A stretch of 64,000 nt of DNA, from positions 248,001-312,000 of the IMG/VR virus record IMGVR_UViG_3300044712_001255. One strand, 5' to 3'. Both the position numbers and the translations under genes were made by a program. Below the pieces are notes generated by a model, which saw only the letters and a list, made by a program, of their open reading frames with translations, had not been told where the DNA came from and did no database searches. Positions 8,175-37,938 of this stretch are shown piece by piece (positions within the stretch are counted from its first letter, which is position 1; every line of letters begins with the position of its first letter).

Positions 8175-8393
8175 ATGGAAGATGAAGCGCAACGCAAGAA
8201 GGCGTTAGATGACTTTTTAAGTGTGTTCTCTCAGCAACAACGTGAATTTAAGTTCACTGCGCATGACACAAATGAGACGTTTCGGCCGCCGTTAGCAGGC
8301 GATGGCAATGAATGGCAATTTCAGGCATTTCAGGCATCACCTAAAACAACTGGCGTGGGATATGTGCTGTGGTCTAGAATTCGAAAGCCATGA
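8175..8393 (+). CDS. hypothetical protein
   Basis: 72-aa ORF, ATGA overlap with HNH gene. Confidence 0.45.
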   Translation: MEDEAQRKKALDDFLSVFSQQQREFKFTAHDTNETFRPPLAGDGNEWQFQAFQASPKTTGVGYVLWSRIRKP

Positions 8394-8758
8394 GCAAGAA
8401 AAAGGAGAAACGTGTTCCACGTCCTCGAGGTCGTACGTTGGAACAACTTGCAATTCGAATTGCGCAAACTGATAAAACATTCGACGCATTGCCCGATGGG
8501 TGGAGCGGAAAGTGTATTTTTTGTGGTGGCAGAGTGTTTGTGTCATCATCAGGTAAGACGAACGCTACCATAGAACACATAGTACCAGTTTCTGCGGGTG
8601 GGACAAATGATGAACTCAATGTTGCATTAGCTCATAGCTCTTGCAACTCAGAAAAGGGCGTTCGACACGATCCCAACTACCCAAAAGACCCTCGATCTGT
8701 AGAAGTTGTCAATAACCTGCTCCAAAGACGCCAGGAGAGGTTTCGATCTGATATTTAG
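8390..8758 (+). CDS. HNH endonuclease
   Basis: CIFC...TIEHIVPVSAGG..N.ALAHSSCNSEKG. Confidence 0.75.
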   Translation: MSKKKEKRVPRPRGRTLEQLAIRIAQTDKTFDALPDGWSGKCIFCGGRVFVSSSGKTNATIEHIVPVSAGGTNDELNVALAHSSCNSEKGVRHDPNYPKDPRSVEVVNNLLQRRQERFRSDI

Positions 8759-9592: not shown

Positions 9593-9693
9593 GTGTAAAG
9601 GGTCAAGCGAGGCTATATACTAGAATCAACGCAACAGAAAATGCCACAGCGGTGGAAAATAGTTGTGTACAAGTGAAAGATTAATGATACTGT
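9593..9693 (+). promoter_or_regulatory. tandem promoters upstream of first RNA cluster
   Basis: GTGTAA(9593)-17-TATACT(9616) and GTGTAC(9665)-17-TACTGT(9688). Confidence 0.65.
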
Positions 9694-9742
9694 ATGATTA
9701 CCGAGGCGTTCATACCGCTCGGTCCTACAAATAGGAAATCCA

Positions 9743-9856
9743 ATGAAGACTGCAATCGCAAATATCGCAAAACAATATCGCCAACCAGAATGGCGTATTG
9801 AGGCGAATTATGCGATTCGCAATGCCAATCAGGAGAAGGATAAGATCCCGAGCTAG
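9743..9856 (+). CDS. putative leader peptide (37 aa)
   Basis: AGGAAA SD; MKTAIANIAKQYRQPEWRIEANYAIRNANQEKDKIPS*. Confidence 0.6.
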   Translation: MKTAIANIAKQYRQPEWRIEANYAIRNANQEKDKIPS

Positions 9857-9884
9857 CGTAGTTGAATAAATAAAGTTCAATGCG

Positions 9885-9920
9885 TCGGCTCGGAAGAAGA
9901 TTCCGGGCCGATTGTGTTTT
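9885..9920 (+). terminator. intrinsic terminator / attenuator hairpin before tRNA cluster
   Basis: 11-bp stem TCGGCTCGGAA/TTCCGGGCCGA, loop GAAGA, then TTGTGTTTT. Confidence 0.7.
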
Positions 9921-9925
9921 AGAAT

Positions 9926-10009
9926 GGTGCGTTGCCCGAATGGTTCAAGGGGCGAGGCTGTAGTCCTCGCGGTTAAGACCGATTGGTGGTTCGAATCCAT
10001 CACGCATCA
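9926..10009 (+). tRNA. tRNA-Tyr(GTA)
   Basis: Cloverleaf, CGAGG-CTGTAGT-CCTCG, long variable arm. Confidence 0.9.
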
Positions 10010-10055
10010 CCGGAACTAACGAGTTCTGATGTTCTCTGAAAACTGATCGTTGTAT

Positions 10056-10141
10056 GGATGTGTTGAGCAGGTGGTGAGCTCAGCTGACTGTAAATCAGCC
10101 GCCCGTAACGGGTTTGTCAGGTTCGATTCCTACCGCATCCA
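10056..10141 (+). tRNA. tRNA-Tyr(GTA)
   Basis: GCTGA-CTGTAAA-TCAGC, long variable arm. Confidence 0.9.
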
Positions 10142-10148
10142 CTCATAT

Positions 10149-10231
10149 TCTCGGGTCGGGAAATTGGTATCCCAAGAGATTGTTAATCTCTCGCACGTAA
10201 GTGTATGTAGGTTCGAGCCCTACTCCGAGAG
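10149..10231 (+). tRNA. tRNA-Asn(GTT) with long variable arm
   Basis: AGAGA-TTGTTAA-TCTCT, G73, variable region CGCACGTAAGTGTAT. Confidence 0.85.
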
Positions 10232-10232
10232 C

Positions 10233-10320
10233 GAACTCATAATGCAAGTGCCTGCGTGGAGCAGGAATACTGCAAGTGAAAGGAAGATTAACATACCAAG
10301 TAACACCAAACAGTGGGTTC
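10233..10320 (+). ncRNA. structured RNA with internal GTGAA...AGTAAC helix
   Basis: Closing GAACTC/GGGTTC, hairpin CCTGC/GCAGG, GTGAA 10276 and AGTAAC 10299. Confidence 0.45.
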
Positions 10321-10324
10321 ACAT

Positions 10325-10397
10325 TGCGTAGTAGGCAAATTGGTAAGCCGTGGAGTTGTTACCTCCTTGATTGCGGGTTCGAATCCTGCCTGCGCAG
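10325..10397 (+). tRNA. tRNA-Asn(GTT)
   Basis: TGGAG-TTGTTAC-CTCCT, G73. Confidence 0.85.
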
Positions 10398-10399
10398 CG

Positions 10400-10582
10400 C
10401 CGGATAGTGGTGGGTTCCACTGCGTAAGTGAATGAAGTAACTATGCTAATGCGACGCTTGGGTTCGAGTCCCAACAGGTAACAAATGGGCATAATGGTAA
10501 CGGTTACTGGTTACGCAAAACAAGTTGACTACGAGGGCAAATGTTAGCGTAATCTACTGGGTTCGATTCCCGATAGTCCGCA
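10400..10582 (+). ncRNA. structured RNA with two T-arm-like hairpins
   Basis: GGTTCGAGTCC and GGTTCGATTCC hairpins, GTAAC-TATGC/GCATA-GTTAC and TTACGC/GCGTAA helices; no cloverleaf. Confidence 0.45.
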
Positions 10583-10595
10583 AATCACAATGAAT

Positions 10596-10666
10596 GCCTC
10601 ACTAACATAATGGTAGTGTAACTGGTTCTTACCCAGCTAGTCTCAGTTCGATTCTGGGGTGTGGCA
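10596..10666 (+). tRNA. tRNA-Lys(CTT)
   Basis: ACTGG-TTCTTAC-CCAGC. Confidence 0.85.
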
Positions 10667-10667
10667 C

Positions 10668-10738
10668 TGCGGCGTAGTTCAATGGTAAAACAGCTCGCTC
10701 TGACCGAGTATCTGTAGGTTCAACTCCTACCGCCGCAA
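10668..10738 (+). tRNA. tRNA-Gln(CTG)
   Basis: GCTCG-CTCTGAC-CGAGT. Confidence 0.9.
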
Positions 10739-10741
10739 CGA

Positions 10742-10916
10742 GCCGACAATTCCAGTTTCGAGTACTGGACGCACTTGATAACATTGGCGCTTGAAAGGGC
10801 CCATTCACATTGTCTCGAGCACCAGTGTGATGGGCAGCAAGTACGTAAAACGCCTCACGACATCGTAGAAATAGCAATGAAAACAAAGTGTGTAATGCAA
10901 GTGGTAGCATATCGGC
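10742..10916 (+). ncRNA. circularly permuted tRNA-like RNA, copy 1
   Basis: 3' half 10742-10777 (GCCGA, T arm, CGCACTT-G) precedes 5' half 10886-10916 (AAGTGTG, D arm ATGC/GCAT, TCGGC); all four stems pair. Confidence 0.75.
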
Positions 10917-10924
10917 GTGTTTTT

Positions 10925-10995
10925 TGGAGCATCATCTAATGGCAGGATAGTAGCCTTTGAAGCTATGAATAGGGGTTCGAGTCCCTTTGCTCCAA
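10925..10995 (+). tRNA. tRNA-Gln(TTG)
   Basis: GTAGC-CTTTGAA-GCTAT. Confidence 0.9.
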
Positions 10996-10998
10996 CAA

Positions 10999-11151
10999 GC
11001 CCGAGACCTGGGTTCGAGTCCCAGTTGGACGGTGGCGCTTGAGAGCAAGTCAACGTGCTGATCACACGGAGACATCGCTAGTACGTAAGTCGCCGGCAAT
11101 TGGCTGATCACCTTTTGTCTTGTCCAGTAGTTTAGCGGTCAGAACACGGGC
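10999..11151 (+). ncRNA. circularly permuted tRNA-like RNA, copy 2 (Asp-like scaffold)
   Basis: 3' half 10999-11032 (GCCCG, T arm, TTGGACG-G) precedes 5' half 11121-11151 (TGTCCAG, D arm GTTT/GAAC, CGGGC). Confidence 0.8.
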
Positions 11152-11164
11152 AGTCCTTTCACAT

Positions 11165-11237
11165 GCACTAGTAACTCAATCGGTAGAGTAGACGGCCTTT
11201 AACCGTAAAGTTGAGAGTTCGAGCCTCTCCTGGTGCA
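11165..11237 (+). tRNA. tRNA-Lys(TTT), C33 variant
   Basis: Loop CCTTTAA. Confidence 0.8.
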
Positions 11238-11252
11238 CTTCAACAACGATTT

Positions 11253-11324
11253 GCTTCTGTACGCATCGGGTGAGGCGGGTGGATTGTCAATCCATTGAGG
11301 CGGGTTCGAGTCCCGTCAGAAGCG
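11253..11324 (+). tRNA. tRNA-Asp(GTC)
   Basis: GTGGA-TTGTCAA-TCCAT, G73. Confidence 0.9.
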
Positions 11325-11330
11325 CAATAC

Positions 11331-11403
11331 GTCCCTATAGCTCAACGGATAGAGCGCTTGGCTACGAACCAAGAGGTTGTAAGTTCGAATCTTGCTAGGG
11401 ACG
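11331..11403 (+). tRNA. tRNA-Arg(ACG)
   Basis: CTTGG-CTACGAA-CCAAG. Confidence 0.92.
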
Positions 11404-11404
11404 C

Positions 11405-11478
11405 TGCGGGTTAGAGAAGAGGCCCATCTCACTTGGCTCATAACCAAGAGACCGCCGGTTCGAATCCGGCATCCGCTA
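11405..11478 (+). tRNA. tRNA-Met(CAT), initiator-like
   Basis: CTCATAA loop, 1:72 mismatch; only two G-C pairs at base of anticodon stem. Confidence 0.8.
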
Positions 11479-11479
11479 C

Positions 11480-11554
11480 GACGCTGTAGCTCAAATGCAA
11501 GAGCAGCTGCAATTAAGCAGCAAGATGTTGGTTAAAATCCAGCTGGCGTCACCA
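11480..11554 (+). ncRNA. tRNA-shaped RNA with 6-nt non-canonical anticodon loop and encoded CCA
   Basis: Intact acceptor, D and T stems; GCTGC-AATTAA-GCAGC; ends ACCA. Confidence 0.65.
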
Positions 11555-11555
11555 T

Positions 11556-11631
11556 GGCCTTGTCGTCTATGAATGTAGGACGCCACCCCTTAGTCGAGGT
11601 GGAAAAACAGGTGCGAATACTGTCGAGGCCG
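11556..11631 (+). ncRNA. Glu-like tRNA scaffold with 10-nt anticodon loop
   Basis: GGCCTTG/CGAGGCC acceptor; CCACC-CCTTAGTCGA-GGTGG; degenerate T loop. Confidence 0.55.
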
Positions 11632-11637
11632 CAAATT

Positions 11638-11710
11638 GATTCTGTCGTCTATGAGTAAGACAATCCCAAATTGGTGGGAATAAAAGCTGATTCGTTGTCA
11701 GCCTGGATCA
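11638..11710 (+). ncRNA. tRNA-shaped RNA with non-canonical anticodon loop
   Basis: GTCT/AGAC D stem; TCCCA-AATTGG-TGGGA; GCTGA/TCAGC T stem. Confidence 0.55.
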
Positions 11711-11711
11711 C

Positions 11712-11785
11712 TGGCACATGATGTAGTGGTTTCTGCATGCTGGTCTGATAAATCAGTCGTACGAGTCCGATTCTCGTTGTGCCTA
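11712..11785 (+). tRNA. tRNA-Ile(GAT)
   Basis: CTGGT-CTGATAA-ATCAG; slightly atypical T loop. Confidence 0.75.
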
Positions 11786-11786
11786 C

Positions 11787-11858
11787 GGCCTTGTCGTCTA
11801 TCGGTAGGACAATTGGTTCTCAGCTAATAAAGGACGGGTTCGACTCCCTCCAAGGCTA
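11787..11858 (+). tRNA. tRNA-Glu(CTC)
   Basis: ATTGG-TTCTCAG-CTAAT. Confidence 0.85.
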
Positions 11859-11860
11859 CA

Positions 11861-11967
11861 CTCTTTTGCATTGTGGTCGTGTCTCGACGGGGACCAGCGA
11901 TAGGTTCAAATCCTATCATAAAATTTGGTAGCTGAGCGTTGGTTCGAATCCAACGGGTGTAAAAGAG
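11861..11967 (+). ncRNA. closed RNA with two tandem T arms
   Basis: 10-bp closing stem CTCTTTTGCA/TGTAAAAGAG; ATAGG-TTCAAAT-CCTAT and GTTGG-TTCGAAT-CCAAC. Confidence 0.6.
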
Positions 11968-11973
11968 ATTTTT

Positions 11974-12047
11974 GGTCCCATCTTCTAAATGGTCAGGATA
12001 CTAGACTTTCAATCTGGTAATGGCGAGTTCAAGTCTCCCTGGGATCA
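11974..12047 (+). tRNA. tRNA-Glu(TTC)
   Basis: CTAGA-CTTTCAA-TCTGG. Confidence 0.9.
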
Positions 12048-12133
12048 CCTCGAGTTTCCTTCATGAACTTTGTCGTGCCTGCGTGCGTGGAAAGCGACTA
12101 GATCACCTGGTGACAATCGGGAAAGACCGATAA

Positions 12134-12207
12134 CGGGGTGTACCTCAGTCTGGTAGAGGGCTTGTTTTGGGTACAAGACGTCGCACGTTCGATTCGTGTC
12201 ACCCCGA
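12134..12207 (+). tRNA. tRNA-Pro(TGG)
   Basis: CTTGT-TTTGGGT-ACAAG, C1-G72, A73. Confidence 0.9.
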
Positions 12208-12221
12208 CAACGAAAGATTAC

Positions 12222-12293
12222 ATGCCACTGGTGTTAATGGTAACATGTGGGTTTCCAAGTCCCGTGATGCGCGTTCGATTCGTGCGTGGCATG
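12222..12293 (+). tRNA. tRNA-Trp(CCA) (Gly TCC register less consistent)
   Basis: TGGGT-TTCCAAG-TCCCG, G73. Confidence 0.65.
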
Positions 12294-12360
12294 CTAAACA
12301 AAAATGTGTGATACAAGCTCACACATTAGGAATACAACATACAAACGCAAGGAAAAAGTC

Positions 12361-12876
12361 ATGAATATCAGCCAAGCTCTTCGTCGTATCTCAGTCATTA
12401 AGGGTCAGCTCGCAACCACAGCAACACGTTTCGCCAGTTCAGTCACGTGGATTGATGACGCAAAGCCAACATATTCGCTTGCTGAGTGCGATGTTGCGTG
12501 GGCTCGTCTCGTAGGTGAGCAGACGTCGCTTGAGGCCGCAGTGGCAATTGCCAATGCAACGAACAAGATCACCTATCGTGGTCAGGAATTCACGCTTGCG
12601 TTTGCCGTGAAGCAGTTGGCTGTTTTCAAGGCAAAGATTGCGCTCTTGCGAACCCTGAATTGTCAGGCGACTGCAGAACGCACCGATGTTACTCGTGATA
12701 CTGAGTACGTAAATGGAAATTACGTAACTGTCACTCGAGAGAAGAAGGTTCACTGTGCATTCACTGAGCGTGAGCGTGATACGAGTGTTCAGGTAGCGCA
12801 GACAGACTTTGACGAGCTCAACGCACTCGTCGAGGCGGCAAATCACACCATTCAGGTCGACCCTCAGGTCGTCTGA
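12361..12876 (+). CDS. helical/coiled-coil protein, DIP1984-like
   Basis: MNISQALRRISVIKGQL...IANATN...ELNALVEAAN resembles DIP1984-family pattern (recalled, not searched). Confidence 0.55.
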   Translation: MNISQALRRISVIKGQLATTATRFASSVTWIDDAKPTYSLAECDVAWARLVGEQTSLEAAVAIANATNKITYRGQEFTLAFAVKQLAVFKAKIALLRTLNCQATAERTDVTRDTEYVNGNYVTVTREKKVHCAFTERERDTSVQVAQTDFDELNALVEAANHTIQVDPQVV

Positions 12877-12883
12877 TGTGAGA

Positions 12884-13081
12884 TGCGCCGAAAGGGAAGT
12901 TGCTGTTGAAACCCTGTTGATTTAAAATCAACTCAACCCTAATAAGGAATGAAAGCTATTGGTATCGGTTCTGGCATCGCATTCAGCACTCAGCGTCCAG
13001 CATCTTTTCCTATCAGCTCATAGCCCTTAGCAGGTAGATTTCAGCAATCAGCAGTCAATTACAACACGCTTCCCTTGCGTT
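12884..13081 (+). ncRNA. structured RNA with 7-nt-period YAGC repeats
   Basis: Closing AAGGGAAGT/GCTTCCCTT; YAGC at 12984,12991,12998,13014,13021,13028,13042,13049. Confidence 0.6.
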
Positions 13082-13085
13082 GTAT

Positions 13086-13157
13086 GCGGTGATAGTTTAG
13101 TGACAAAACGGCAGGCAACCAAAGCCTGAGATCATGGGTTTGATTCCCACATCCGCG
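13086..13157 (+). pseudogene. degenerate Trp-like tRNA (loop AACCAAA)
   Basis: CAGGC/GCCTG stem, no U33, mismatched acceptor. Confidence 0.45.
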
Positions 13158-13269
13158 CTAAGTAACGAGAAAAATTATCGGGTGAAATACCCATATGCCT
13201 GATTGCGTAAGAAGGGTCGACACTTCTGCGATGGAGGTACAACGCCAGAGGAGCGTTAACGTGAAAGTT
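13157..13269 (+). ncRNA. AGUA/GAA-helix RNA
   Basis: AGTA-ACG (13161) ... CGT-GAA (13261), internal hairpins. Confidence 0.5.
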
Positions 13270-13270
13270 T

Positions 13271-13341
13271 GGGGCTTTCGTATAGCGGGATTACGCTGGC
13301 TTTGCAAGCCAGTCACACGGGTTCGAGTCCCGTAGGCTCCA
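13271..13341 (+). tRNA. tRNA-Ala(TGC)
   Basis: CTGGC-TTTGCAA-GCCAG, G3:U70. Confidence 0.92.
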
Positions 13342-13374
13342 CAAATCAACAATGACTGCGTTCAAAGTTGATCA

Positions 13375-13500
13375 ATTACGAGTAACTATTAAGCGGTGTA
13401 AATCCGCATTGTATGCAACGTCATCGACAGTTCGCCTCGATCGGGGTGACTGCCCTCTGCACGTTGACGTACTGGCCGGTGAGCCTAATGTGAAAGTAGT
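13375..13500 (+). ncRNA. AGUA/GAA-helix RNA
   Basis: ATTAC-G-AGTA-AC ... GT-GAA-A-GTAGT; GCGG-TGTAAAT-CCGC hairpin. Confidence 0.55.
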
Positions 13501-13505
13501 GTCAT

Positions 13506-13577
13506 GGGCCTGTAGTTTAATAGGGAAAATTCCTGCCTCGCACGCAGAAAACTCGGGTTCGAATCCCGATGGGTCCA
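13506..13577 (+). tRNA. tRNA-Ala(CGC)
   Basis: CCTGC-CTCGCAC-GCAGA, G3:U70. Confidence 0.88.
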
Positions 13578-13589
13578 CACAATCAACGA

Positions 13590-14630
13590 TCAGTTTGATA
13601 AGAGGTGCCTAAGAACGTCATTGTATGATTCAACCTTGACGTTTGACAATGCATTAAAGATTTCATCTTGCGTTGCCTTGTCTTTCACGTTCTGCTTGAT
13701 CCAATCAATCACTTGGTCCTTATTTACGCCGCCTTGCGTTTGTGATTGTGTACGTGAGCTGCTGTTGGTTTGTTGATTAGGTTGCTGTTCAGTAGACTCT
13801 TCATTAGACCGTTGTGATACTTGCGTATCAAAATTTTGGATCTCTTTGCCCACAGCTTGCATTTTTTCGATCATCGCTGCTAATTTGCCGCTTTTCACTA
13901 TTTGCGCAATTTCTCTTGCTATATTTGCATCAACGTTCATGCCAGCTTGCTTACCAGCTGACATTACAATTGATTGCAACGTATTACTTCCGTGTTGATC
14001 GCCTCGTGGCAATTCACTGCCGCCTGGTACCTTACCAGCATCTAGCGATGTTGCCTGCTTTGTTGGCCTTTGTGCTGTGATTTGTGGTTGTGGTTTTGGC
14101 TTTGGCGTCGCAGGTACAGGTTTCTTTCCAAACTTTGCATTTGCAAGTTCTTCATCTGATTGCACGCCACGTTCTTGTTCGTCTACTGCTTCCATTAGAC
14201 GACGAAACTTTGTGTGAAATGACTCATTGATTTCAGCAGCATCAACTTTTTGTGCAACAAGCTCGTAAAAATGCATACATTTCATGAACTCTTTTTCAAG
14301 AAGCTTGAAATCGCCGTCCTCGTCGTCAAAAATGTCCTTGGAAATACGACCTAAAAATCCTTTTATCTTATCAATGGTGCTTTTCTTATTAACTTGCTTG
14401 TACTTTGCGAATTTCCCTTTTATGTTATCAAGCGTTGTTGCAAGTTGATTTGCGATCGTTATTTGATCATTAGCTTTTAGTACGTCCACTGTTTGCTTCA
14501 CATTTTTGAAAAGCGCTTTGAATTTTGCAAATAACTCTTTATCGATTGCTTCATTCAATTGCTGACGAATGTTCTCATCGATCTTCAAAAGCTTTCGACG
14601 TTGCGCAAGCGTAAGTTTGCTGGTAGACAT
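13590..14630 (-). CDS. charged protein with Gln-rich linker (putative virion internal protein)
   Basis: IRQQLNEA and FRRLMEA motifs; ATAGTTA 10 nt upstream. Confidence 0.6.
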   Translation of the reverse strand: MSTSKLTLAQRRKLLKIDENIRQQLNEAIDKELFAKFKALFKNVKQTVDVLKANDQITIANQLATTLDNIKGKFAKYKQVNKKSTIDKIKGFLGRISKDIFDDEDGDFKLLEKEFMKCMHFYELVAQKVDAAEINESFHTKFRRLMEAVDEQERGVQSDEELANAKFGKKPVPATPKPKPQPQITAQRPTKQATSLDAGKVPGGSELPRGDQHGSNTLQSIVMSAGKQAGMNVDANIAREIAQIVKSGKLAAMIEKMQAVGKEIQNFDTQVSQRSNEESTEQQPNQQTNSSSRTQSQTQGGVNKDQVIDWIKQNVKDKATQDEIFNALSNVKVESYNDVLRHLLSN

Positions 14631-19538: not shown

Positions 19539-21179
19539 ATGGCTAAGAAGACTGCTAAGAATGTTGCTCCGGTTCAGATGTCTGAGGCTGACGCAGCGAA
19601 ACTGCGTGAGGCTGCGGCTCGATTCGATCTCAACGTTCACATCATCAATTTCCTCAGCTCTAACGCATTCTATGCTGAGATCTCTCGTCGAGTTCACAAG
19701 ATCAGCACGAAGGACATTCCCACCGCTGCTGTGGCTTGGAACCAGAAGCTCGACAACATCGTGTTGTACTACAACCCGGAATTCATGTGCCAGCACACCC
19801 CAAAGCAGGTGATTGGCATTCTGAAGCACGAATTCAGTCACTTGTTCTACGGACACTTGAACGCTCGTCGGAAGACTCCACACCGTATGTGGAACATCGC
19901 TACCGATCTTGCAATCAATTCGCTGATTGTTTCGAGCGAGCAGAATTCTGCTTCATATTCTAACATCAACAATCCTCAGGCTGTTTTGCCGGAATGCGCA
20001 TTGATTCCCGGCCACCCGGTTTTCTTTGCAGATCTCAAGCGGCCCTTGACGGCTGATGAGAAGGCTGCGCAGCCCATCGCTGCTCTTATCGAGAAGATGA
20101 AGCCGTTGCTCGCTTCTGAGGATTATTTCCAGCAGCTGATGAAGGTCGCAAAGGAACAGCAGAACACTTGCCCGATGTGTGGCGGTTCTGGCAAGATCAA
20201 GGTGAAGTCTGACGCGGGTGGAGATGAGAATAGCTCAGACGGGCGGGACGGCGTCGAGAAGGAAGGCCAGGACAAGGGCGAAAATGACAAGGGTAATGGG
20301 TCATCTCGCGGAGATGATTCTCACGACGAGGGATGCGAGGGCGATGGAAATTGTTCTTGTGGCCACGGCGATAACGAGCCCGGTGGTTGTAGTGGTCCTG
20401 ATGGTGAATATGATTGCCCTTGCTGCAAGGGCGATGGTGAGCTCGGTGACGGCATTGGTTCGATGGACGATCATGGATTTTGGGATGACATCCCGGAAGA
20501 TATGCGTGAATACGTCGAAAATCGTGTGCGTAACGTGATTGAGCGCGCTGTTGAATCCGCCGATCAGAGCTCGAATGGCTGGGGCTATATGCCTGCTTCG
20601 ATTCGTGAGGAGATTCGTCGGTTCGTATCCAAGAAGGTGCCGTGGCGCTCTGTACTCCGGCAGTTCATTGGAGTGCTTCTGCCAGGCGATCGTTCTACCA
20701 GCATCAAGCGCATCAATCGTCGCTATCCGTATATCCATCCCGGTGTGAAGCGTGGTCGCAAGGCTAAGCTTCTCGTCGCAATCGATATGTCTGGTTCTGT
20801 TGGAGAGGAACTTCTCGCAACGTTCTTTGCGGAACTAACCAACTTGGCAAAGAATTGTGAGATCGATGTTGTCCCGTTCGATTGCTCTGCTGAACCTGAA
20901 CATATCGTCAAGTGGCGACGTGGTGGTCCCCCTCCGATGGGTCGGGTGAAGGCCGGTGGTACCAGCTTTGATGCTCCCACTGACCTTGCCAATGATCCTA
21001 AGAACCGCGGTCGTTGGGATGGTCTGCTAATCGTCACAGACGGGATTTGCAACGCTCCCAAGGAAAGTCGGGTACGTCGCGGATGGGTTCTTGGTCCTGG
21101 GTGCAAGCTGCAATTCGACTCGAACGAGCTCCAGGTCTTCGTAGACAATGAGCGACCGATGGTCGGAGCGTGGAGGTGA
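19539..21179 (+). CDS. metallopeptidase-like plus vWA domain protein (DUF2201-type)
   Basis: HEFSH, NIATDLAIN, vWA DMSGS...GGT...IVTDG; promoter GTGCAG(19476)-17-TAGAGT. Confidence 0.8.
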   Translation: MAKKTAKNVAPVQMSEADAAKLREAAARFDLNVHIINFLSSNAFYAEISRRVHKISTKDIPTAAVAWNQKLDNIVLYYNPEFMCQHTPKQVIGILKHEFSHLFYGHLNARRKTPHRMWNIATDLAINSLIVSSEQNSASYSNINNPQAVLPECALIPGHPVFFADLKRPLTADEKAAQPIAALIEKMKPLLASEDYFQQLMKVAKEQQNTCPMCGGSGKIKVKSDAGGDENSSDGRDGVEKEGQDKGENDKGNGSSRGDDSHDEGCEGDGNCSCGHGDNEPGGCSGPDGEYDCPCCKGDGELGDGIGSMDDHGFWDDIPEDMREYVENRVRNVIERAVESADQSSNGWGYMPASIREEIRRFVSKKVPWRSVLRQFIGVLLPGDRSTSIKRINRRYPYIHPGVKRGRKAKLLVAIDMSGSVGEELLATFFAELTNLAKNCEIDVVPFDCSAEPEHIVKWRRGGPPPMGRVKAGGTSFDAPTDLANDPKNRGRWDGLLIVTDGICNAPKESRVRRGWVLGPGCKLQFDSNELQVFVDNERPMVGAWR

Positions 21180-23869: not shown

Positions 23870-24466
23870 TTGATAGAATTGATCGATATGAAGAAATGTG
23901 ATGCATCTCTTGAAGAGATTCAAAGATTCGTAAAAGAATCAACATGTATTTCGCAAGTTGTCATTGCGCTCAAATTACCGTGTAATGCGAAGTACGCAGA
24001 ATTTGTTCGTCAATTGATCTCACAACACGCACTTGACACATCTCACTTCACACGCAAACGAAAATATGAACGAATCAGAAAAGCTTGTCCTGTTTGTCAA
24101 ACAACGTTTGAAACATACGTAAATCATCCTAAATACAACAAAACAACGTGTTCGTGTGCTTGCGCAAATTCATTCTTTCGTAGTGGAAATAACAACCCAA
24201 ACACAAAGCATGACGAAGATAAGGGAACGTGGATGTACACGTTATGTTGGAAAAATCATGAACATCAATGCGTCATTTGTGGTGAACAAAACATCGTAGC
24301 TGTTCACCATTTTAATGGTAAACATGATGACAATCGACCAGAGAATTTGGTACCTATGTGTCCAACACATCATCAATATTGGCACTCTAAATTTCGATCA
24401 CTCATAGAGGAAAAAGTAAACACATATGTAGAAAATTGGATCTCAACACATCAGAGATTAGTGTAG
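23870..24466 (+). CDS. HNH endonuclease
   Basis: CPVC, CSCAC, CVIC..AVHH.N..H.DN..NLVPMCPTHH; stop lies inside downstream tRNA. Confidence 0.7.
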   Translation: MIELIDMKKCDASLEEIQRFVKESTCISQVVIALKLPCNAKYAEFVRQLISQHALDTSHFTRKRKYERIRKACPVCQTTFETYVNHPKYNKTTCSCACANSFFRSGNNNPNTKHDEDKGTWMYTLCWKNHEHQCVICGEQNIVAVHHFNGKHDDNRPENLVPMCPTHHQYWHSKFRSLIEEKVNTYVENWISTHQRLV

Positions 24467-24522
24467 TGGTTGCACACCTGCCTTGGGGACAGGTTGTCGG
24501 AGTTCGATTCTCCGATCTCTGA
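24452..24522 (+). tRNA. tRNA-Pro(TGG)
   Basis: Loop CTTGGGG, C1-G72, A73. Confidence 0.85.
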
Positions 24523-24523
24523 C

Positions 24524-24770
24524 GCACACGTGGTGGAAAGGCAGACACAACATTAAAAGCGTAAGGTGCTTGTTGGCGTTGATTCGCCAGCATCAAGCAT
24601 GGATCGAGGGAGCGTAACGCGGTGCGGAAAACGGCCAACGGGTACGACAATCGTGAAGTGTGCAGCAGGTTTGCGGATGCACCGGAACGGCGCTCGAGGG
24701 TGTCGTAAGGGAAGCGAGCTTATCCTAAAAGCTGCAGATGTGGATGCGGGTTCGAGTCCCGCCGTGCGCA
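24524..24770 (+). ncRNA. tRNA scaffold with 182-nt structured insert replacing the anticodon loop
   Basis: Leu-type D arm GTG-GAAAGGCAGA-CAC, ACATT/GATGT stem, T arm GCGGG-TTCGAGT-CCCGC, A73. Confidence 0.7.
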
Positions 24771-24773
24771 AAT

Positions 24774-24844
24774 CAGGGACAGGTGTAATGGTTGCACCTC
24801 TGTTTCGGGAACAGATAGTCGGAGTTCGATTCTCCGGTCCTTGA
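24774..24844 (+). tRNA. tRNA-Pro(CGG)
   Basis: TCTGT-TTCGGGA-ACAGA. Confidence 0.88.
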
Positions 24845-25884: not shown

Positions 25885-25886
25885 CA

Positions 25887-26043
25887 GATCAAGTAACCAG
25901 ATCTTTTGATCCGATGTTGATAACGTAAGTCAACTTTTTGGCGGAACTGGCAGACGCGCCGGCCTAAGAAACTGGCATGATCATTTGAACAAAATTCTTG
26001 TGATCTATGTGGGTTCAAGTCCCACAAGAGAAGGTGAACGATC
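25887..26043 (+). ncRNA. tRNA mimic on AGUA/GAA helix, unit 1 (Leu AAG-like core)
   Basis: GATC-A-AGTA-ACC ... GGT-GAA-C-GATC enclosing D arm, loop CTAAGAA, long variable arm, T arm. Confidence 0.7.
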
Positions 26044-26047
26044 ATTT

Positions 26048-26119: not shown

Positions 26120-26121
26120 CA

Positions 26122-26212
26122 GAGCGCGGTAACTACGTTCGTTGTCATGGTTTGACAAGGAATTCTTTCAAAAATTCCTATTTTGGTTCGAATCCAAATA
26201 GGTGAAGCGCTC
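26122..26212 (+). ncRNA. tRNA mimic on GGUA/GAA helix, unit 2 (Glu-like core)
   Basis: GAGCGC-GGTA-ACT ... GGT-GAA-GCGCTC; D, anticodon-like (8-nt loop) and T arms. Confidence 0.7.
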
Positions 26213-26219
26213 AATCTTC

Positions 26220-26318
26220 AAACAAAAGTAACCTCACAAACGAAGTGTTGATAGTGACACAACTTGAGTTTAACAAGAAAAAGTAGGTGCAAGTCCTGCC
26301 GTGAAGGTGAAATTGTTT
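26220..26318 (+). ncRNA. tRNA mimic on AGUA/GAA helix, unit 3
   Basis: AAACAA-A-AGTA-ACC ... GGT-GAA-A-TTGTTT; loop AGTTTAA; T arm GTAGG/CCTGC. Confidence 0.7.
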
Positions 26319-26324
26319 CTTTTT

Positions 26325-26421
26325 CAACAAAGTAACTGTTTTCGTGTTGATTGATAATCATCTTAGCTTAAAACTAAGACAATCTGGTGAGACTCCAGAC
26401 TCGAGTTTAGGTGAAATGTTG
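26325..26421 (+). ncRNA. tRNA mimic on AGUA/GAA helix, unit 4
   Basis: CAACA-A-AGTA-ACT ... GGT-GAA-A-TGTTG; CTTAG-CTTAAAA-CTAAG; T arm TCTGG/CCAGA. Confidence 0.7.
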
Positions 26422-26428
26422 TACAAAC

Positions 26429-26505
26429 GTGATGAGTAACATACAATGTCAAGGTGACATCCACAAGATGTCATACGTGGTGCAAATCCCGGACGTGAAA
26501 ATCAT
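26429..26505 (+). ncRNA. reduced tRNA mimic on AGUA/GAA helix, unit 5
   Basis: GTGAT-G-AGTA-AC ... GT-GAA-A-ATCAT; GGTGCAAATCC T-loop-like. Confidence 0.55.
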
Positions 26506-26510
26506 ACGAT

Positions 26511-26581: not shown

Positions 26582-26663
26582 CGATACTAAAAACACAGTA
26601 ACGAAAAAAAGCAATAAACGCTTTGAGAGATTATTGCTGAAGTGAAAATGAGAGTAGGTATCG
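26582..26663 (+). ncRNA. AGUA/GAA-type RNA without tRNA core, unit 6
   Basis: CGATACT/GGTATCG closing, AGTAAC 26597, GTGAA 26642, AGCAATAA/TTATTGCT hairpin; weaker flanking pairs. Confidence 0.4.
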
Positions 26664-26668
26664 ACGTC

Positions 26669-27014: not shown

Positions 27015-27557
27015 ATGGCAAATCAATATTCTAAGTTTAAATGGGAAGATGAACGTCCATTTGAAGATCTGGGCCGAGTAAAACAACGTAACTTCCTAAT
27101 AAAAGAAGCGAATTTTAGTTGTTCTGCTTGCGGCTTCAATAAGTCAAGAGAAGACGGACGATCAATTTTAGAAATTCATCACATCGATGGGAATCATCAA
27201 AATAATGTTCGATCAAATTTGAAAGTGTTATGTCCAAATTGCCATGCCATGACGTTAAAATTCAGATTTTACGGAAAATCACATCTATCGTCAAAAGATC
27301 ATAGAGCTCGAACTATCAATAAAGAGCTCAGAATAAAACGTAAATTAGCGAGAGAACAACGCCAATCAAAAATTAGAGATCAGTTTTGTGAAACGATATT
27401 GTTATGTCATGAGACAAAAGAAATTGATTTCTCTAAATTTGGATGGGTATTACGTCTATCTGAGATGTTTGGCGTAACGCACCAAGCAATTGGTAGACGT
27501 ATAAGAAAATTGATGCCAGAATTCTACAATGATCATTGCTTCAAAAGGAAAGCATAA
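27015..27557 (+). CDS. HNH endonuclease
   Basis: CSAC...LEIHHIDGNHQNN..NLKVLCPNCH. Confidence 0.78.
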   Translation: MANQYSKFKWEDERPFEDLGRVKQRNFLIKEANFSCSACGFNKSREDGRSILEIHHIDGNHQNNVRSNLKVLCPNCHAMTLKFRFYGKSHLSSKDHRARTINKELRIKRKLAREQRQSKIRDQFCETILLCHETKEIDFSKFGWVLRLSEMFGVTHQAIGRRIRKLMPEFYNDHCFKRKA

Positions 27558-27724: not shown

Positions 27725-28042
27725 ATGATAGCACAAAAAGCACGGTTGATGACTAAACTAGTCTCTCTATTGAGAAAGAAGTTGTTTGATAATTCACCTT
27801 TCATTGAAGAGGTGCTCACTCAACTCGACATATTGACTCTCGAGAGAGGCATCAAAGTATGCGTAGAAGATCAGTTGATCGTGGTGTATTTACCAAGCAA
27901 ACCGGGATTCAATCCAATTCCCGTCGCGGCTGGCGTGATGCACCAGGCTGACGTCATTTTTGAATATGAAGCTGGCACGGGACGCATTGTCAAGTGCCTC
28001 AAGCATCGTGAACGTAATCCAGAAGAATTCAATAACGTATGA
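27725..28042 (+). CDS. hypothetical protein
   Basis: 105-aa ORF coupled to next gene. Confidence 0.45.
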   Translation: MIAQKARLMTKLVSLLRKKLFDNSPFIEEVLTQLDILTLERGIKVCVEDQLIVVYLPSKPGFNPIPVAAGVMHQADVIFEYEAGTGRIVKCLKHRERNPEEFNNV

Positions 28043-36126: not shown

Positions 36127-36625
36127 CAATACACCCCCACTCAAGTGCTTCTTTTGCCAATAACTTTGCGCCATTGATGTGAAAGTTATTGTCATCATAG
36201 AATTCCACTTGACGTAGGCCACGTTGCTTGATCAATTGCGCAATATATCGCGCCTTTCCAGGTGGAATGTCTGCTTTCTCGCCGAGTGCCATGACTTCGC
36301 ATCCCGGCATATTGTGCATATCAAGGAACTCCTTGGGTCCATTGGGAGATCCTCGGGCAGTCATCACCATCACGCCTTCAGGACCCAATCGCTTGTATGC
36401 GTCCTTTGCTATGTCGAGAATCTCATCATTCTCGTGAAATTCGGGCGCAAGCGACTGGAATTGACTCATATCGTATGAGTACTGTGTTTCGTCCATGCGA
36501 TGTTCTCGCCATTGTCGAGAATCTAGCCATTGGACCTCACCAGTGTCGAGGTCAGTTACCTTGATGCGTGCATCAGAGACACACAACGTATCATCAAAGT
36601 CGAAAATGTAAAGCTTGTTTGGCAT
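36104..36625 (-). CDS. HAD-superfamily phosphatase (RNA-repair type)
   Basis: IFDFDDTL, VMTAR, K, FYDD. Confidence 0.72.
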   Translation of the reverse strand: MPNKLYIFDFDDTLCVSDARIKVTDLDTGEVQWLDSRQWREHRMDETQYSYDMSQFQSLAPEFHENDEILDIAKDAYKRLGPEGVMVMTARGSPNGPKEFLDMHNMPGCEVMALGEKADIPPGKARYIAQLIKQRGLRQVEFYDDNNFHINGAKLLAKEALEWGCIVNVHLVR

Positions 36626-36702
36626 CTAGCTTACCTAGCAAATCCTATCCCTCTTATACGCGGTGTACTCGAGCGTCATTGTGTGGTAATGTACCTATAA
36701 AT

Positions 36703-37938
36703 ATGGCACACAATATTCCCATAGTGATCGAATACTTGAAGACCCACTCTCTCCAGGAGCTGGAGGATGAGCATGGCGTCAAAGCTCGTCCTGACGCGGC
36801 GAACACCAAGTTTAGCCTAAATTACGATCAATTGGCTATCAAGGGCGGTGACAAGCTTGCTGAGCAGTGCCGCGGTATGGTTGTTCGTCCAATCAATGTT
36901 GCAACTTCTGGCGCATCATTTGATTGGGAAAAGCTACGTTCTGCACCCGTTGGCGAGTGCGTTGTCCTGTGTCGGCCAATGGATCGATTCTACAATGACG
37001 GTGATTTCTACGCCGCAAAGATAGACTATGATTCTGCCGTCGTGTATGAGAAGCTCGACGGTACTATGATGGCTGCATATTGGGACCCGCTCAAGGCTGC
37101 ATGGCACACCGCAACTCGATCAATTCCTGAGGCTGACCTGCCAATTCGGTTGGGAGACTTGGTGTTGGAAGATACCACGTTCCGTGGTCTGTTCGATCAG
37201 GCATTGGAATACATGATTAATGGTGAACGTGATCCAATGTTTCCAAATGCAATGACGTGGTGGAATCGACTCAACAAGCAATACACCTATGTCTTTGAAC
37301 TGACGAGCCCATTGAATCGTGTAGTTGTGCAGTATGACGAACCACGTATTACTGCGATCGCTTGTCGAGATAACGTATCTGGTCGTGAATGTCTCACTGG
37401 TATGTATCAACTCTGGCCTCGCCCTCGCACGTGGAAGCTCAATGACACTCATGCTATTAAGGCATTGGCGGATTCATTCTCTCCCGCTGAGTTGGAGGGG
37501 TTTGTAGTGTGTGATGTTCATTTCAAACGCGTCAAGATCAAGAATGCTGCATACGTCTTGGCACACCACGCCAAGGATGGCATCGTGTCTTCAAAGCGCA
37601 ATGCGCTTGTCGCAGCATTCAAGGGAATCCTTGATGACGTCATGCCCATGGTCGATCCTGCAACGCGAAAGGCAATGGAGGAACTGCAATTTGCTGTTGG
37701 CAAGTTCATCAAGGAGAGCGAAGCAAAGTACGCAGATTGGGCATCGCAGTGCGAACCCGGTGACAACAAGACGTTTGCGTCCTTTGTGAGCGCAAATCAA
37801 CCCGTGTTGTCGTCAGCGTACTATGCCGTGTTCCGCGGCAAGAGCAAGACCATCGGAGAATACATGACTCAACACATTGGCGAAGGAATGATTGGCGACA
37901 AGGCACTCGACAATATTCTTACCTACTTGAAGGTGTGA
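36703..37938 (+). CDS. T4 Rnl1-like RNA ligase
   Basis: EKLDGT (motif I), HTATR, YVFELTSP, EGFVV, VKIKN; start re-assigned to MAHNIP. Confidence 0.8.
   Translation: MAHNIPIVIEYLKTHSLQELEDEHGVKARPDAANTKFSLNYDQLAIKGGDKLAEQCRGMVVRPINVATSGASFDWEKLRSAPVGECVVLCRPMDRFYNDGDFYAAKIDYDSAVVYEKLDGTMMAAYWDPLKAAWHTATRSIPEADLPIRLGDLVLEDTTFRGLFDQALEYMINGERDPMFPNAMTWWNRLNKQYTYVFELTSPLNRVVVQYDEPRITAIACRDNVSGRECLTGMYQLWPRPRTWKLNDTHAIKALADSFSPAELEGFVVCDVHFKRVKIKNAAYVLAHHAKDGIVSSKRNALVAAFKGILDDVMPMVDPATRKAMEELQFAVGKFIKESEAKYADWASQCEPGDNKTFASFVSANQPVLSSAYYAVFRGKSKTIGEYMTQHIGEGMIGDKALDNILTYLKV

What the first reader, a model, noticed from the sequence alone, without database searches (positions are those of the whole stretch)
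10742..11151. Two circularly permuted tRNA-shaped genes in a phage tRNA cluster
In both copies the 3' half (anticodon-stem 3' strand, variable loop, T arm, acceptor 3' strand, G73) lies upstream of the 5' half (acceptor 5' strand, TA at 8-9, D arm, anticodon-stem 5' strand). Copy 1: AAGTGTG/CGCACTT, ATGC/GCAT, TCGGC/GCCGA. Copy 2: TGTCCAG/TTGGACG, GTTT/GAAC, CGGGC/GCCCG. The sequences differ but all pairings hold, which argues against chance or a single assembly error. Each unit sits between normal tRNAs, so processing of the neighbours would release an RNA whose ends lie in the anticodon loop. Permuted tRNA genes are established in red algae, some other algae/nucleomorphs and a few archaea; I know of none in phages. 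Junction sequences do not rebuild a canonical YU-anticodon loop, so either (a) the phage Rnl1-like ligase circularises them before maturation or (b) they mimic anticodon-cleaved tRNA as decoys or sensors against host anticodon nucleases.
Basis: partly seen in the sequence, partly recalled or inferred. Interest (0 to 1): 0.92.

Follow-up and report, generated by a model that had tools for sequence, protein, structure and literature searches.

The report
Two capped tRNA mimics in phage
Two adjacent stretches in a giant phage's tRNA gene cluster really do encode tRNA-shaped RNAs with their halves in swapped order, but they look like non-decoding tRNA mimics carrying a conserved extra domain (a design related to the known YrlA RNAs), not like true permuted tRNA genes.

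Summary
Units 10739-10924 and 10996-11164 each have the order anticodon-stem 3' strand, variable loop, T arm, acceptor 3' strand, G73, an 88-108 nt insert, acceptor 5' strand, UA, D arm, anticodon-stem 5' strand. Both lie flush between ordinary tRNAs. All 12 inter-half base pairs form in both units; none of 1,980 chimeras of unrelated halves exceeds 10 of 12, and 300 randomised windows gave no hit. Joining the real ends would give 11- and 16-nt 'anticodon loops', there is no BHB motif, and tRNA-Glu(UUC) and the other tRNAs expected are already present. The same strand order is already known in phages: YrlA RNAs next to Ro60 genes. These units are not YrlA members: no Ro60 gene in the 64 kb window, no RF02553 match, different arm sequences, and caps 5-30 times longer. 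Best reading (confidence 0.5): acceptor-capped, non-decoding tRNA mimics released by processing of the neighbouring tRNAs. No homologue was found anywhere, so function stays inferred.

The parts
10739..10924 (+). Unit 1, whole RNA as released by processing of the flanking tRNAs (186 nt): 3-nt leader CGA, permuted tRNA body with 108-nt cap, 8-nt tail GTGTTTTT
10742..10777 (+). Unit 1 3' half: anticodon-stem 3' strand GCCGA, variable loop CAATT, T arm, extra A 10769, acceptor 3' strand CGCACTT, discriminator G
10778..10885 (+). Unit 1 acceptor cap (108 nt); conserved core 10785-10854 = TGGCGCTTGAAAG (10785-10797), hairpin of about 11 bp, AGTACGTAA (10840-10848), CGCC (10851-10854)
10886..10916 (+). 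Unit 1 5' half: acceptor 5' strand AAGTGTG, U8 A9, D arm, A26, anticodon-stem 5' strand TCGGC
10925..10995 (+). Ordinary tRNA-Gln(UUG) separating the two units; its RNase P site and 3' end define unit 1's 3' end and unit 2's 5' end
10996..11164 (+). Unit 2, whole RNA as released by processing of the flanking tRNAs (169 nt): leader CAA, permuted tRNA body with 88-nt cap, 13-nt tail AGTCCTTTCACAT
10999..11032 (+). Unit 2 3' half: GCCCG, variable loop AGAC, T arm CTGGG-TTCGAGT-CCCAG, acceptor 3' strand TTGGACG, discriminator G
11033..11120 (+). Unit 2 acceptor cap (88 nt); conserved core 11033-11094 = TGGCGCTTGAGAG (11033-11045), hairpin of unrelated sequence, AGTACGTAA (11080-11088), CGCC (11091-11094)
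11121..11151 (+). Unit 2 5' half: TGTCCAG, U8 A9, D arm GTTT-AGCGGTCA-GAAC, A26, CGGGC
10668..10738 (+). Ordinary tRNA-Gln(CUG); its discriminator (10738) lies 3 nt before unit 1's first stem
11165..11237 (+). Ordinary tRNA-Lys(UUU); its 5' end defines unit 2's 3' end
36568..37938 (+). T4 Rnl1-family RNA ligase (context only; candidate end-joining enzyme, link to the units not shown)
   Evidence: Pfam RNA_lig_T4_1, E 1.6e-5, below cut-off; phrog_562, E 2.9e-34; T4 Rnl1 2C5U, E 6e-6

Best explanation
The two units are paralogous, non-decoding tRNA mimics. Each is co-transcribed with the tRNA array. It is freed when the 3' end of the upstream tRNA and the RNase P site of the downstream tRNA are cut. 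It then folds into a tRNA-like L shape in which the acceptor end is closed by an 88-108 nt domain and the 'anticodon stem' is an open-ended 5-bp helix with short tails. The tRNA body supplies shape only, for recognition by tRNA-handling proteins. The conserved core of the cap (TGGCGCUUGARAG ... AGUACGUAA-NN-CGCC around a variable hairpin, possibly a loop-E / bulged-G type module) is the sequence-specific part and most likely binds a dedicated partner. The RNA would then work as a tRNA-shaped adaptor or decoy in this phage's tRNA-maintenance toolkit, analogous in logic to YrlA with Ro60. Shown: the anatomy, the statistics, the conservation pattern, and the absence of a rebuildable anticodon loop. 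Inferred: co-transcription and release (probability about 0.8), L-shaped fold (about 0.75), non-decoding (about 0.85), a partner that binds the cap (about 0.5), and a role in tRNA repair or anti-defence (about 0.3). By analogy with M. smegmatis YrlA, whose 7-bp acceptor stem is cut by RNase P and then receives CCA, the units may also be nicked at the acceptor end in vivo.
For: The permuted cloverleaf is recovered by unguided folding, by pair counting and by the scanner with its null. No promoter- or terminator-like site lies inside the units, the spacers to neighbouring tRNAs are 3 and 8-13 nt as between ordinary tRNAs here (0-14 nt), and the phage's tRNAs lack encoded CCA, so a 3' endonucleolytic cut is needed. 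The tRNA bodies of the two units are 58% identical, which is the background between unrelated tRNAs of this phage (median 55%), yet the caps share exact 13-, 9- and 4-nt blocks around a hairpin whose sequence differs while its pairing is kept. The motif occurs only twice in the window and only on this contig among viral contigs. The real junctions give 11- and 16-nt loops, not anticodon loops. The tRNA repertoire is already near-complete, including Glu-UUC at 11974-12047. The same strand order exists in phage-encoded YrlA tRNA mimics. The context includes Rnl1, a possible PNK and Pth2. No decayed complementary halves lie nearby.
Against: There is no expression data. No homologue was found in any collection: the only relative's contig stops short of the region, and the nearest annotated phage lacks such elements in the 150 kb scanned. 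The only comparative evidence is therefore two paralogues in one metagenomic contig. The fold of the cap is unresolved, because the GGCG/CGCC closure has only about 5% probability in full-length unit 1. No partner protein is identified, and no Ro60 is in the window. MFE z-scores are unremarkable (-1.8 and +0.14). The apparent covariation (13 of 21 stem pairs differ on both sides, none broken) could reflect descent from two different tRNAs and not compensatory evolution.
Confidence: 0.5

Rival explanations
1. True circularly permuted tRNA genes. After the neighbours are processed, the 5'-P and 3'-OH ends in the open 'anticodon loop' are sealed by the phage Rnl1. RNase P and the 3' endonuclease then remove the cap, CCA is added, and a functional tRNA results.
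For: The tRNA bodies are canonical, with 7-bp acceptor, G73, 5-bp anticodon stem, A26 and the tertiary-pair nucleotides. The ends produced by RNase P and 3' processing would be directly ligatable (established enzymology). A T4 Rnl1-family ligase is encoded 25 kb away. [quoted passage not shown]
Against: Sealed loops would be 11 and 16 nt with no conserved YU-NNN-R pattern, and ARAGORN rejects them without an invented intron. There is no BHB. The cap is conserved and structured, which is unexpected for a discarded linker. Unit 1 has an extra base between the T and acceptor stems. No decoding gap needs filling.
Confidence: 0.1
2. The cap is the functional product. The paired tRNA halves only act as a processing cassette, so that RNase P and the 3' endonuclease excise a 90-110 nt small RNA with exact 5'-P and 3'-OH ends, possibly circularised afterwards. 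The nicked tRNA body is a by-product.
For: Sequence conservation is concentrated in the cap. 7-bp acceptor stems are RNase P determinants. Phage tRNA clusters are known to carry other small stable RNAs released by tRNA processing, such as T4 rnaC and rnaD.
Against: Two ordinary flanking tRNAs would do the same job. Keeping matched halves with intact D/T tertiary nucleotides and a 5-bp closing stem in both paralogues suggests the tRNA-shaped body itself is needed.
Confidence: 0.17
3. Divergent members of the YrlA family proper: they bind a Ro60/TROVE protein encoded elsewhere on the 324-kb genome or by the host.
For: The order of T arm, capped acceptor and D arm is the same. TROVE proteins are widespread in viral contigs, including huge phages, and are noted in jumbo phages with a tRNA-like partner.
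Against: No TROVE protein is in the 64-kb window, whereas YrlA is defined as lying within 4 kb of Ro60. RF02553 gives no hit at E<=10 although it detects the Bxz1 copy. The YrlA-typical D and T stems are absent, and none of 72 YrlA-type elements abuts a tRNA. There is no extended Ro-binding stem, because the closing helix is 5 bp and flush with tRNAs.
Confidence: 0.1
4. Non-functional relics of tandem tRNA duplications and rearrangements in a fast-turning-over tRNA cluster full of homing endonucleases.
For: The cluster is mosaic, with several HNH genes. The one relative differs immediately upstream of tRNA-Trp. Tandem paralogues do mimic a permuted pair, as with tRNA-Pro at 24488-24804. Other spacers hold orphan T arms.
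Against: Both units keep every stem and all tertiary nucleotides with no disruption. Identical cap blocks persist while everything around them has diverged. No decayed complementary halves are nearby.
Confidence: 0.1
5. Assembly artefact.
For: This is a single metagenomic contig and no reads are available here.
Against: Two units of different sequence share the same architecture and are separated by an intact tRNA. The exact cap blocks are embedded in otherwise unrelated sequence.
Confidence: 0.03

Closest known systems
YrlA (Y RNA-like A; Rfam RF02553), the tRNA-mimicking partner of bacterial and phage Ro60/Rsr
   Same: It has the same strand order: variable region, T arm, acceptor-like stem closed by a loop, U8-A9, D arm, closing stem. 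It has no free CCA end and keeps tRNA tertiary nucleotides. It occurs in phages with many tRNAs. I verified this on Bxz1 and on 72 elements in 80 viral Ro60 loci.
   Different: YrlA lies within 4 kb of Ro60, has a 3-22 nt cap, near-invariant GCUC/GAGC D and GCGGG/CCCGY T stems, an extended Ro-binding stem at its ends, and never abuts a tRNA in my sample. The window's units have 88-108 nt caps with their own conserved core, unrelated arm sequences, a bare 5-bp closing stem flush with tRNAs, no Ro60 in 64 kb and no RF02553 hit.
Circularly permuted tRNA genes of red and green algae and Thermofilum pendens
   Same: The 3' half lies upstream of the 5' half, the intervening sequence sits at the acceptor boundary, and the body is a canonical cloverleaf.
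   Different: Those genes depend on a BHB motif at the junction and on a splicing endonuclease and ligase. Joining restores a canonical tRNA, and the intervening sequence is removed and discarded. Here there is no BHB, no canonical loop after joining, the setting is bacterial or phage, and the intervening domain is conserved.
Two-piece (circularly permuted) tmRNA genes
   Same: The order is permuted, with an intervening segment between the acceptor 3' and 5' strands, in bacteria (cited).
   Different: ARAGORN calls no tmRNA. The 3:70 pairs are G-C and U-A, with no G3:U70 alanine identity. No tag reading frame is conserved between the units (my reading of the sequence).
Phage T4 species 1 and 2 RNAs (rnaC, rnaD)
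   Same: They are small stable RNAs of unknown function encoded flush inside a phage tRNA cluster. rnaC carries a T arm and an acceptor-like helix.
   Different: rnaC has normal topology, with the acceptor strands at the two ends and the extra domain inside. It is not permuted and shares no sequence motif with the units.

Membership tests
Circularly permuted tRNA gene (algal/archaeal type) | 3' half encoded upstream of 5' half, joined by an intervening sequence at the acceptor boundary | tested here: met
Circularly permuted tRNA gene (algal/archaeal type) | Leader and trailer form a bulge-helix-bulge motif at the junction | tested here: not met
   The leader is only 3 nt (CGA, CAA) before the stem and the tails are 8 and 13 nt, so there is no room for a 4-bp helix with two 3-nt bulges
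Circularly permuted tRNA gene (algal/archaeal type) | Joining the termini restores a canonical tRNA (7-nt anticodon loop or other canonical position) | tested here: not met
   Loops of 11 and 16 nt; ARAGORN gives 0 genes without the intron option
Circularly permuted tRNA gene (algal/archaeal type) | Circular RNA intermediate and mature CCA-ended tRNA in vivo | not testable with these tools
   Needs RT-PCR or RNA-seq
YrlA (RF02553) | Order of T arm, capped acceptor-like stem-loop and D arm, with tRNA tertiary nucleotides | tested here: met
YrlA (RF02553) | Encoded within about 4 kb of a Ro60/TROVE gene on the same strand | tested here: not met
   No TROVE hit among 67 ORFs (the larger ones across the window) scanned with Pfam or PHROGs. 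The rest of the 324-kb contig was not examined; TROVE scans of viral contigs did not list it but are not exhaustive
YrlA (RF02553) | Match to the family covariance model | tested here: not met
   No RF02553 hit at E<=10 on 10700-11200; the positive control Bxz1 gave 32.5 bits, E 3.9e-4
YrlA (RF02553) | Conserved D and T stem sequences | tested here: not met
   60/72 YrlA-type elements have GCUC/GAGC and 41/72 have GCGGG/CCCGY; the units have AUGC/GCAU and GUUU/GAAC, and CCAGU/ACUGG and CUGGG/CCCAG
YrlA (RF02553) | GNCGAAN0-1G motif near the 5' end | tested here: inconclusive
   Absent from both units, but the exact motif was also absent from my Bxz1 control stretch
YrlA (RF02553) | Binds Ro60 | not testable with these tools
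   Needs immunoprecipitation
Two-piece tmRNA | tRNA-Ala-like acceptor (G3:U70) plus a tag reading frame; detected by ARAGORN's permuted tmRNA search | tested here: not met
Canonical tRNA (RF00005) | Contiguous cloverleaf with a 7-nt anticodon loop | tested here: not met
   No RF00005 or ARAGORN call on the units as encoded

The most novel reading that the evidence does not exclude
These are the first permuted tRNA genes of a bacterial virus, matured without any BHB splicing machinery. Processing of the flanking tRNAs by RNase P and the 3' endonuclease leaves 5'-P and 3'-OH ends in the open anticodon loop. The phage's own Rnl1, whose known role is sealing broken anticodon loops, joins them into a circle or a re-ordered tRNA. 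The acceptor cap is then removed or kept as a regulatory lid. A weaker version is that Rnl1 merely circularises the mimic to make it exonuclease-proof.
Probability: 0.1. Interest if true: 0.9.

Novelty: new variant of a known kind. Interest (0 to 1): 0.6.

Why it matters
If these RNAs are expressed, three things follow. First, tRNA mimicry with a capped acceptor end would not be tied to Ro60. Second, a huge phage would be placing such mimics directly inside its tRNA processing line. Third, a new conserved RNA module of about 60-70 nt would be riding on a tRNA scaffold. That offers a concrete handle on what phage tRNA clusters do beyond decoding: sponging or recruiting tRNA-binding enzymes, toxins or repair factors. 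It would also be a natural substrate for testing whether Rnl1-type ligases do more than repair. The work also gives a practical caution: tRNA-shaped 'permuted' genes in bacteria and phages should first be compared with YrlA-type mimics before being called permuted tRNA genes.

Tried and rejected
1. 'Missing tRNA-Glu(UUC)' idea. UUUC strings in both tails suggested a hidden Glu anticodon. Rejected because an ordinary tRNA-Glu(UUC) lies at 11974-12047, found by Rfam only.

2. Homologue hunt by the exact cap motif. The viral scan returned only the window's own contig. The 6 metagenome hits and 1 genome hit are all chance matches inside coding DNA. A looser motif gave 120 or more chance loci.

3. 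Homologue hunt by flanking proteins. I found one relative at 78% and 49% amino-acid identity on a 4.7-kb contig that ends 685 nt upstream of the homologous gene, short of the units. The upstream ORF has no homologue.

4. Nearest annotated phage, LR756508.1. I scanned 150 kb and found no element.

5. Known RNA families. Rfam gave nothing at the gathering threshold or at E<=10.

6. Promoters and terminators. There is no promoter or terminator inside the units.

7. Peptide or tmRNA-like tag in the cap. The reading frames are not conserved between the units (my reading of the sequence).

8. Split-tandem relic. There are no decayed complementary halves within 9600-13600.

9. Origin from one of the phage's own tRNAs. 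The best body identity is 63-68%, about the 95th percentile of the background.

10. ARAGORN as a significance test. Dropped as too lenient, because it.5% of chimeras.

11. Secondary structure of the cap. Several registers are possible (GGCG/CGCC; GCUUG/CNAGU; a bulged-G-like GAR/AGUA juxtaposition). Two sequences cannot decide between them.

12. Ro60 elsewhere on the contig. Two viral scans did not list the contig, but they keep only the best 80 of 393 hits, so this is inconclusive.
Full report
**Setting**

The window is part of a 324,468-bp IMG/VR contig, IMGVR_UViG_3300044712_001255. The window corresponds to contig positions 248,001-312,000. The contig is a myovirus-type jumbo phage: it has a baseplate wedge protein, giant lectin-domain fibre proteins and two sigma factors. 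It has no DNA match in the annotated phage collection. Between positions 9,926 and 35,308 it carries about 48 tRNA genes, all on the + strand. ARAGORN finds 45, and Rfam adds three more at 11480-11551, 11974-12047 and 32444-32517. Interspersed with the tRNA genes are:
- HNH endonuclease genes;
- a Pth2 peptidyl-tRNA hydrolase;
- a NADAR/SLOG pair;
- a radical-SAM/SPASM protein;
- an ATP-dependent DNA ligase.

Just downstream lie a T4 Rnl1-family RNA ligase and, next to it, a weak polynucleotide-kinase candidate. The ligase is supported by PHROG 562 at E 2.9e-34 and by T4 Rnl1 (2C5U) as the best solved structure.

Yes. In both tRNA-free gaps (10739-10924 and 10996-11164) the sequence reads, in order: anticodon-stem 3' strand, variable loop, T arm with loop TTCGAGT, acceptor 3' strand, G73, a long insert, acceptor 5' strand, U8-A9, D arm with G18G19, A26, anticodon-stem 5' strand. 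The evidence is as follows.
- **Unguided folding.** Minimum-free-energy folding of each complete gap, with no guidance, returns exactly this permuted cloverleaf. In the thermodynamic ensemble the four stems have pair probabilities of 0.74-1.0 in unit 1 and 0.3-0.98 in unit 2.
- **Pairing between the halves.** The two stems that join the halves (acceptor 7 bp plus anticodon 5 bp) are 12/12 paired in both units. None of 1,980 chimeras built from halves of the phage's ordinary tRNAs exceeds 10/12. Crossing the two units gives 5-6/12.
- **Formal scanner.** A strict scanner requiring the T arm, 7/7 acceptor, 4/4 D stem with GG, and 5/5 anticodon stem finds the two units and one instructive trivial case at 24488-24804. 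That case is the 3' half of the intact tRNA-Pro(UGG) pairing with the 5' half of the intact paralogue tRNA-Pro(CGG). The scanner finds nothing in 300 Markov-randomised copies of the window.
- **ARAGORN.** It calls both un-permuted sequences tRNAs when a neutral loop is supplied. It also accepts 6.5% of unrelated chimeras, so I give this little weight.
- **Divergence between the units.** 13 of the 21 stem pairs differ on both sides and none is broken. The 15:48 tertiary pair switches from A:U to G:C (read from the sequence).
- **One irregularity.** Unit 1 has an extra A (10769) between the T stem and the acceptor strand.

The 'linkers' are not junk. They are 108 and 88 nt long and share exact blocks: TGGCGCTTGA-R-AG, AGTACGTAA and CGCC. 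These blocks flank a hairpin whose sequence is unrelated in the two units but whose pairing is kept. The tRNA bodies, by contrast, are only 58% identical. That is the background level between unrelated tRNAs of this phage (median 55%), and neither body is a recent copy of any resident tRNA.

This pattern fits a sequence-constrained RNA module mounted on a scaffold that is constrained only in shape. The combined motif occurs twice in the window against zero expected, and nowhere else in the window even with mismatches in either half. The fold of the module cannot be settled from two sequences. GGCG/CGCC closure is favoured for the isolated cores but has only about 5% probability in full-length unit 1. 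The facing strings GAR and AGUA would be compatible with a loop-E / bulged-G module, but that is my inference and is not a tested result.

**Could it be a real permuted tRNA gene?**

Established permuted tRNA genes, in algae and one archaeon, have several defining features. A BHB motif formed by leader and trailer is cut and ligated by the splicing machinery to give a circular intermediate. The junction restores a canonical tRNA. RNase P and tRNase Z then remove the intervening sequence. This locus differs on each point.
- The leader is 3 nt and the tails are 8 and 13 nt, so no BHB can form.
- Joining the real ends gives loops of 11 nt (GUGUUUUUCGA) and 16 nt (AGUCCUUUCACAUCAA). ARAGORN rejects both products unless it may invent a 4- or 9-nt intron.
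- My own idea that the units supply a missing tRNA-Glu(UUC) failed, because an ordinary one lies at 11974-12047.

The phage's tRNAs lack encoded CCA, so their 3' ends are made by an endonucleolytic cut. Standard RNase P and RNase Z chemistry would then leave a 5'-phosphate and a 3'-OH on each unit, and an Rnl1-type ligase is encoded. I keep this as the low-probability novel case.

**The closest known thing**

Chen et al. 2014 (PMC4201824) described YrlA RNAs next to Ro60 genes in more than 250 bacteria and 22 phages. Their tRNA-like domain has the order T arm, acceptor-like stem closed by a loop, then D arm. The M. smegmatis YrlA, which has a 7-bp acceptor stem, is cut by RNase P and receives CCA in vivo. 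I verified the comparison instead of relying on memory.
- **Positive control.** Rfam holds YrlA (RF02553) and detects a copy 190 nt upstream of the Ro-like gene gp220 of mycobacteriophage Bxz1 (32.5 bits, E 3.9e-4).
- **Same order.** That RNA reads GCGGG-UUCGAAU-CCCGU / CAGGUGG / 16-nt cap / ACGCCUG / UA / GCUC-AUGGUA-GAGC, which is the same order as the window's units.
- **A larger sample.** In 80 viral Ro60 loci fetched with a TROVE alignment, my scanner finds 72 such elements.

So tRNA-shaped RNAs with 'permuted' order are not new to phages. The window's units nevertheless fail the family's defining tests.
- There is no TROVE protein among the window's ORFs.
- There is no RF02553 hit even at E<=10.
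- The arm sequences differ: 60 of 72 YrlA-type elements have the GCUC/GAGC D stem.
- The caps are 88-108 nt, against 3-22 nt in 65 of 72 YrlA-type elements.
- The units are flush with tRNAs on both sides, which none of the 72 elements is.

The exact GNCGAA motif is absent, but it was also absent from my Bxz1 control stretch, so that test is inconclusive.

Other comparators:
- ARAGORN, which detects permuted tmRNA genes, calls none here, and the 3:70 pairs are G-C and U-A.
- T4's rnaC, a stable RNA flush in the T4 tRNA cluster, is tRNA-like but of normal topology.

**Ordinary explanations**
- **Relic of split tandem tRNAs.** This would predict decayed complementary halves nearby. None scores above the shuffled-query null within 9600-13600, and both units are free of any stem disruption.
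- **Internal transcription signals.** There is no promoter- or terminator-like site inside the units.
- **Mis-assembly.** This cannot be tested without reads. It is unlikely given two different sequences with the same architecture.

**Relatives**

I could not find any homologue.
- The exact motif is unique to this contig in IMG/VR.
- All seven hits in the metagenome and genome collections are chance matches in coding DNA.
- The flanking proteins have a single relative. Its 4.7-kb contig aligns with the window only from 12270 onward and carries an inserted endonuclease-like ORF upstream.
- The nearest annotated phage, LR756508.1 at 26-30% amino-acid identity, has no such element in the 150 kb scanned.

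All comparative inference therefore rests on two paralogues.

**Verdict**

The best-supported reading (confidence about 0.5) is a pair of non-decoding, acceptor-capped tRNA mimics. They would be cut out of the tRNA precursor by processing of their neighbours. Their conserved cap module is the specific functional element, most likely a partner-binding site. They work like YrlA but are not members of that family. I rate them a new variant of a known kind.

The rivals, in order of confidence, are:
- the cap as an excised small RNA (0.17);
- true permuted tRNAs sealed by Rnl1 (0.10);
- divergent YrlA with a distant Ro60 (0.10);
- relics (0.10);
- assembly artefact (0.03).

Noticed in passing
window 11480-11551, 11974-12047, 32444-32517: Three tRNAs are found by Rfam but not by ARAGORN. 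11974-12047 is tRNA-Glu(UUC). 11480-11551 seems to have a 5-bp anticodon stem GCUGC/GCAGC closing a 6-nt loop AAUUAA, which is non-canonical. 32444-32517 has loop UCGACAA (Val-GAC-like, with C at position 33).
   Followed up: partly
window 10399-10595, 25886-26047, 26121-26510 (also 10233-10324, 13343-13505, 26583-26668): Other tRNA-free spacers of the cluster hold structured, partly tRNA-like elements. There are orphan T arms at 10458, 26009 and 26182; the last sits in a long hairpin closed by AGAGCGC/GCGCUC. Short strings AGUAAC (5' side) and GGUGAA (3' side) recur. These may be a second family of small RNAs or processing signals.
   Followed up: partly
window 24488-24804: The 3' half of the intact tRNA-Pro(UGG) pairs 7/7 and 5/5 with the 5' half of the intact tRNA-Pro(CGG) 249 nt downstream. 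This is a natural example of how tandem paralogues could seed a permuted arrangement.
   Followed up: yes
window 8390-8758, 19539-21179, 23870-24466, 27015-27557, 35312-35632, 62801-63724: At least six HNH or homing-endonuclease-like genes lie in or next to the tRNA cluster. The one relative (L124:1-552) has a different endonuclease-like ORF (Cys finger plus a PD-(D/E)XK-like YPDFYL...EVKG motif) where the window has tRNAs. This indicates rapid mosaic turnover of the cluster.
   Followed up: partly
window 28039-28876, 32571-32957, 30302-31363, 34190-34591: A YspA/SLOG-NADAR gene pair, a Pth2 peptidyl-tRNA hydrolase, a SPASM-domain (radical SAM-like) protein and a RyR-domain protein are embedded among the tRNAs.
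   Followed up: no
window 36104-36625 (-) and 36568-37938 (+): A divergently arranged pair: an Rnl1-family RNA ligase and a 173-aa ORF with only a weak polynucleotide-kinase PHROG hit (E 1.3e-4; no Pfam or PDB match). If the ORF is a real kinase, this is a T4-like tRNA repair module with overlapping gene starts.
   Followed up: partly
L233:157-228 (LR756508.1, 434334-434405): The nearest annotated relative, a 484-kb uncultured phage, carries a CUA-anticodon (amber suppressor-type) tRNA. ARAGORN labels it tRNA-Pyl. This hints at stop-codon recoding in that phage.
   Followed up: no
L135, L138, L143, L144, L147, L148 (viral Ro60 loci): Many viral Ro60 genes are preceded by two or three tandem YrlA-type capped tRNA-like elements, not one. 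393 viral stretches encode TROVE relatives, including contigs of 435-465 kb.
   Followed up: partly
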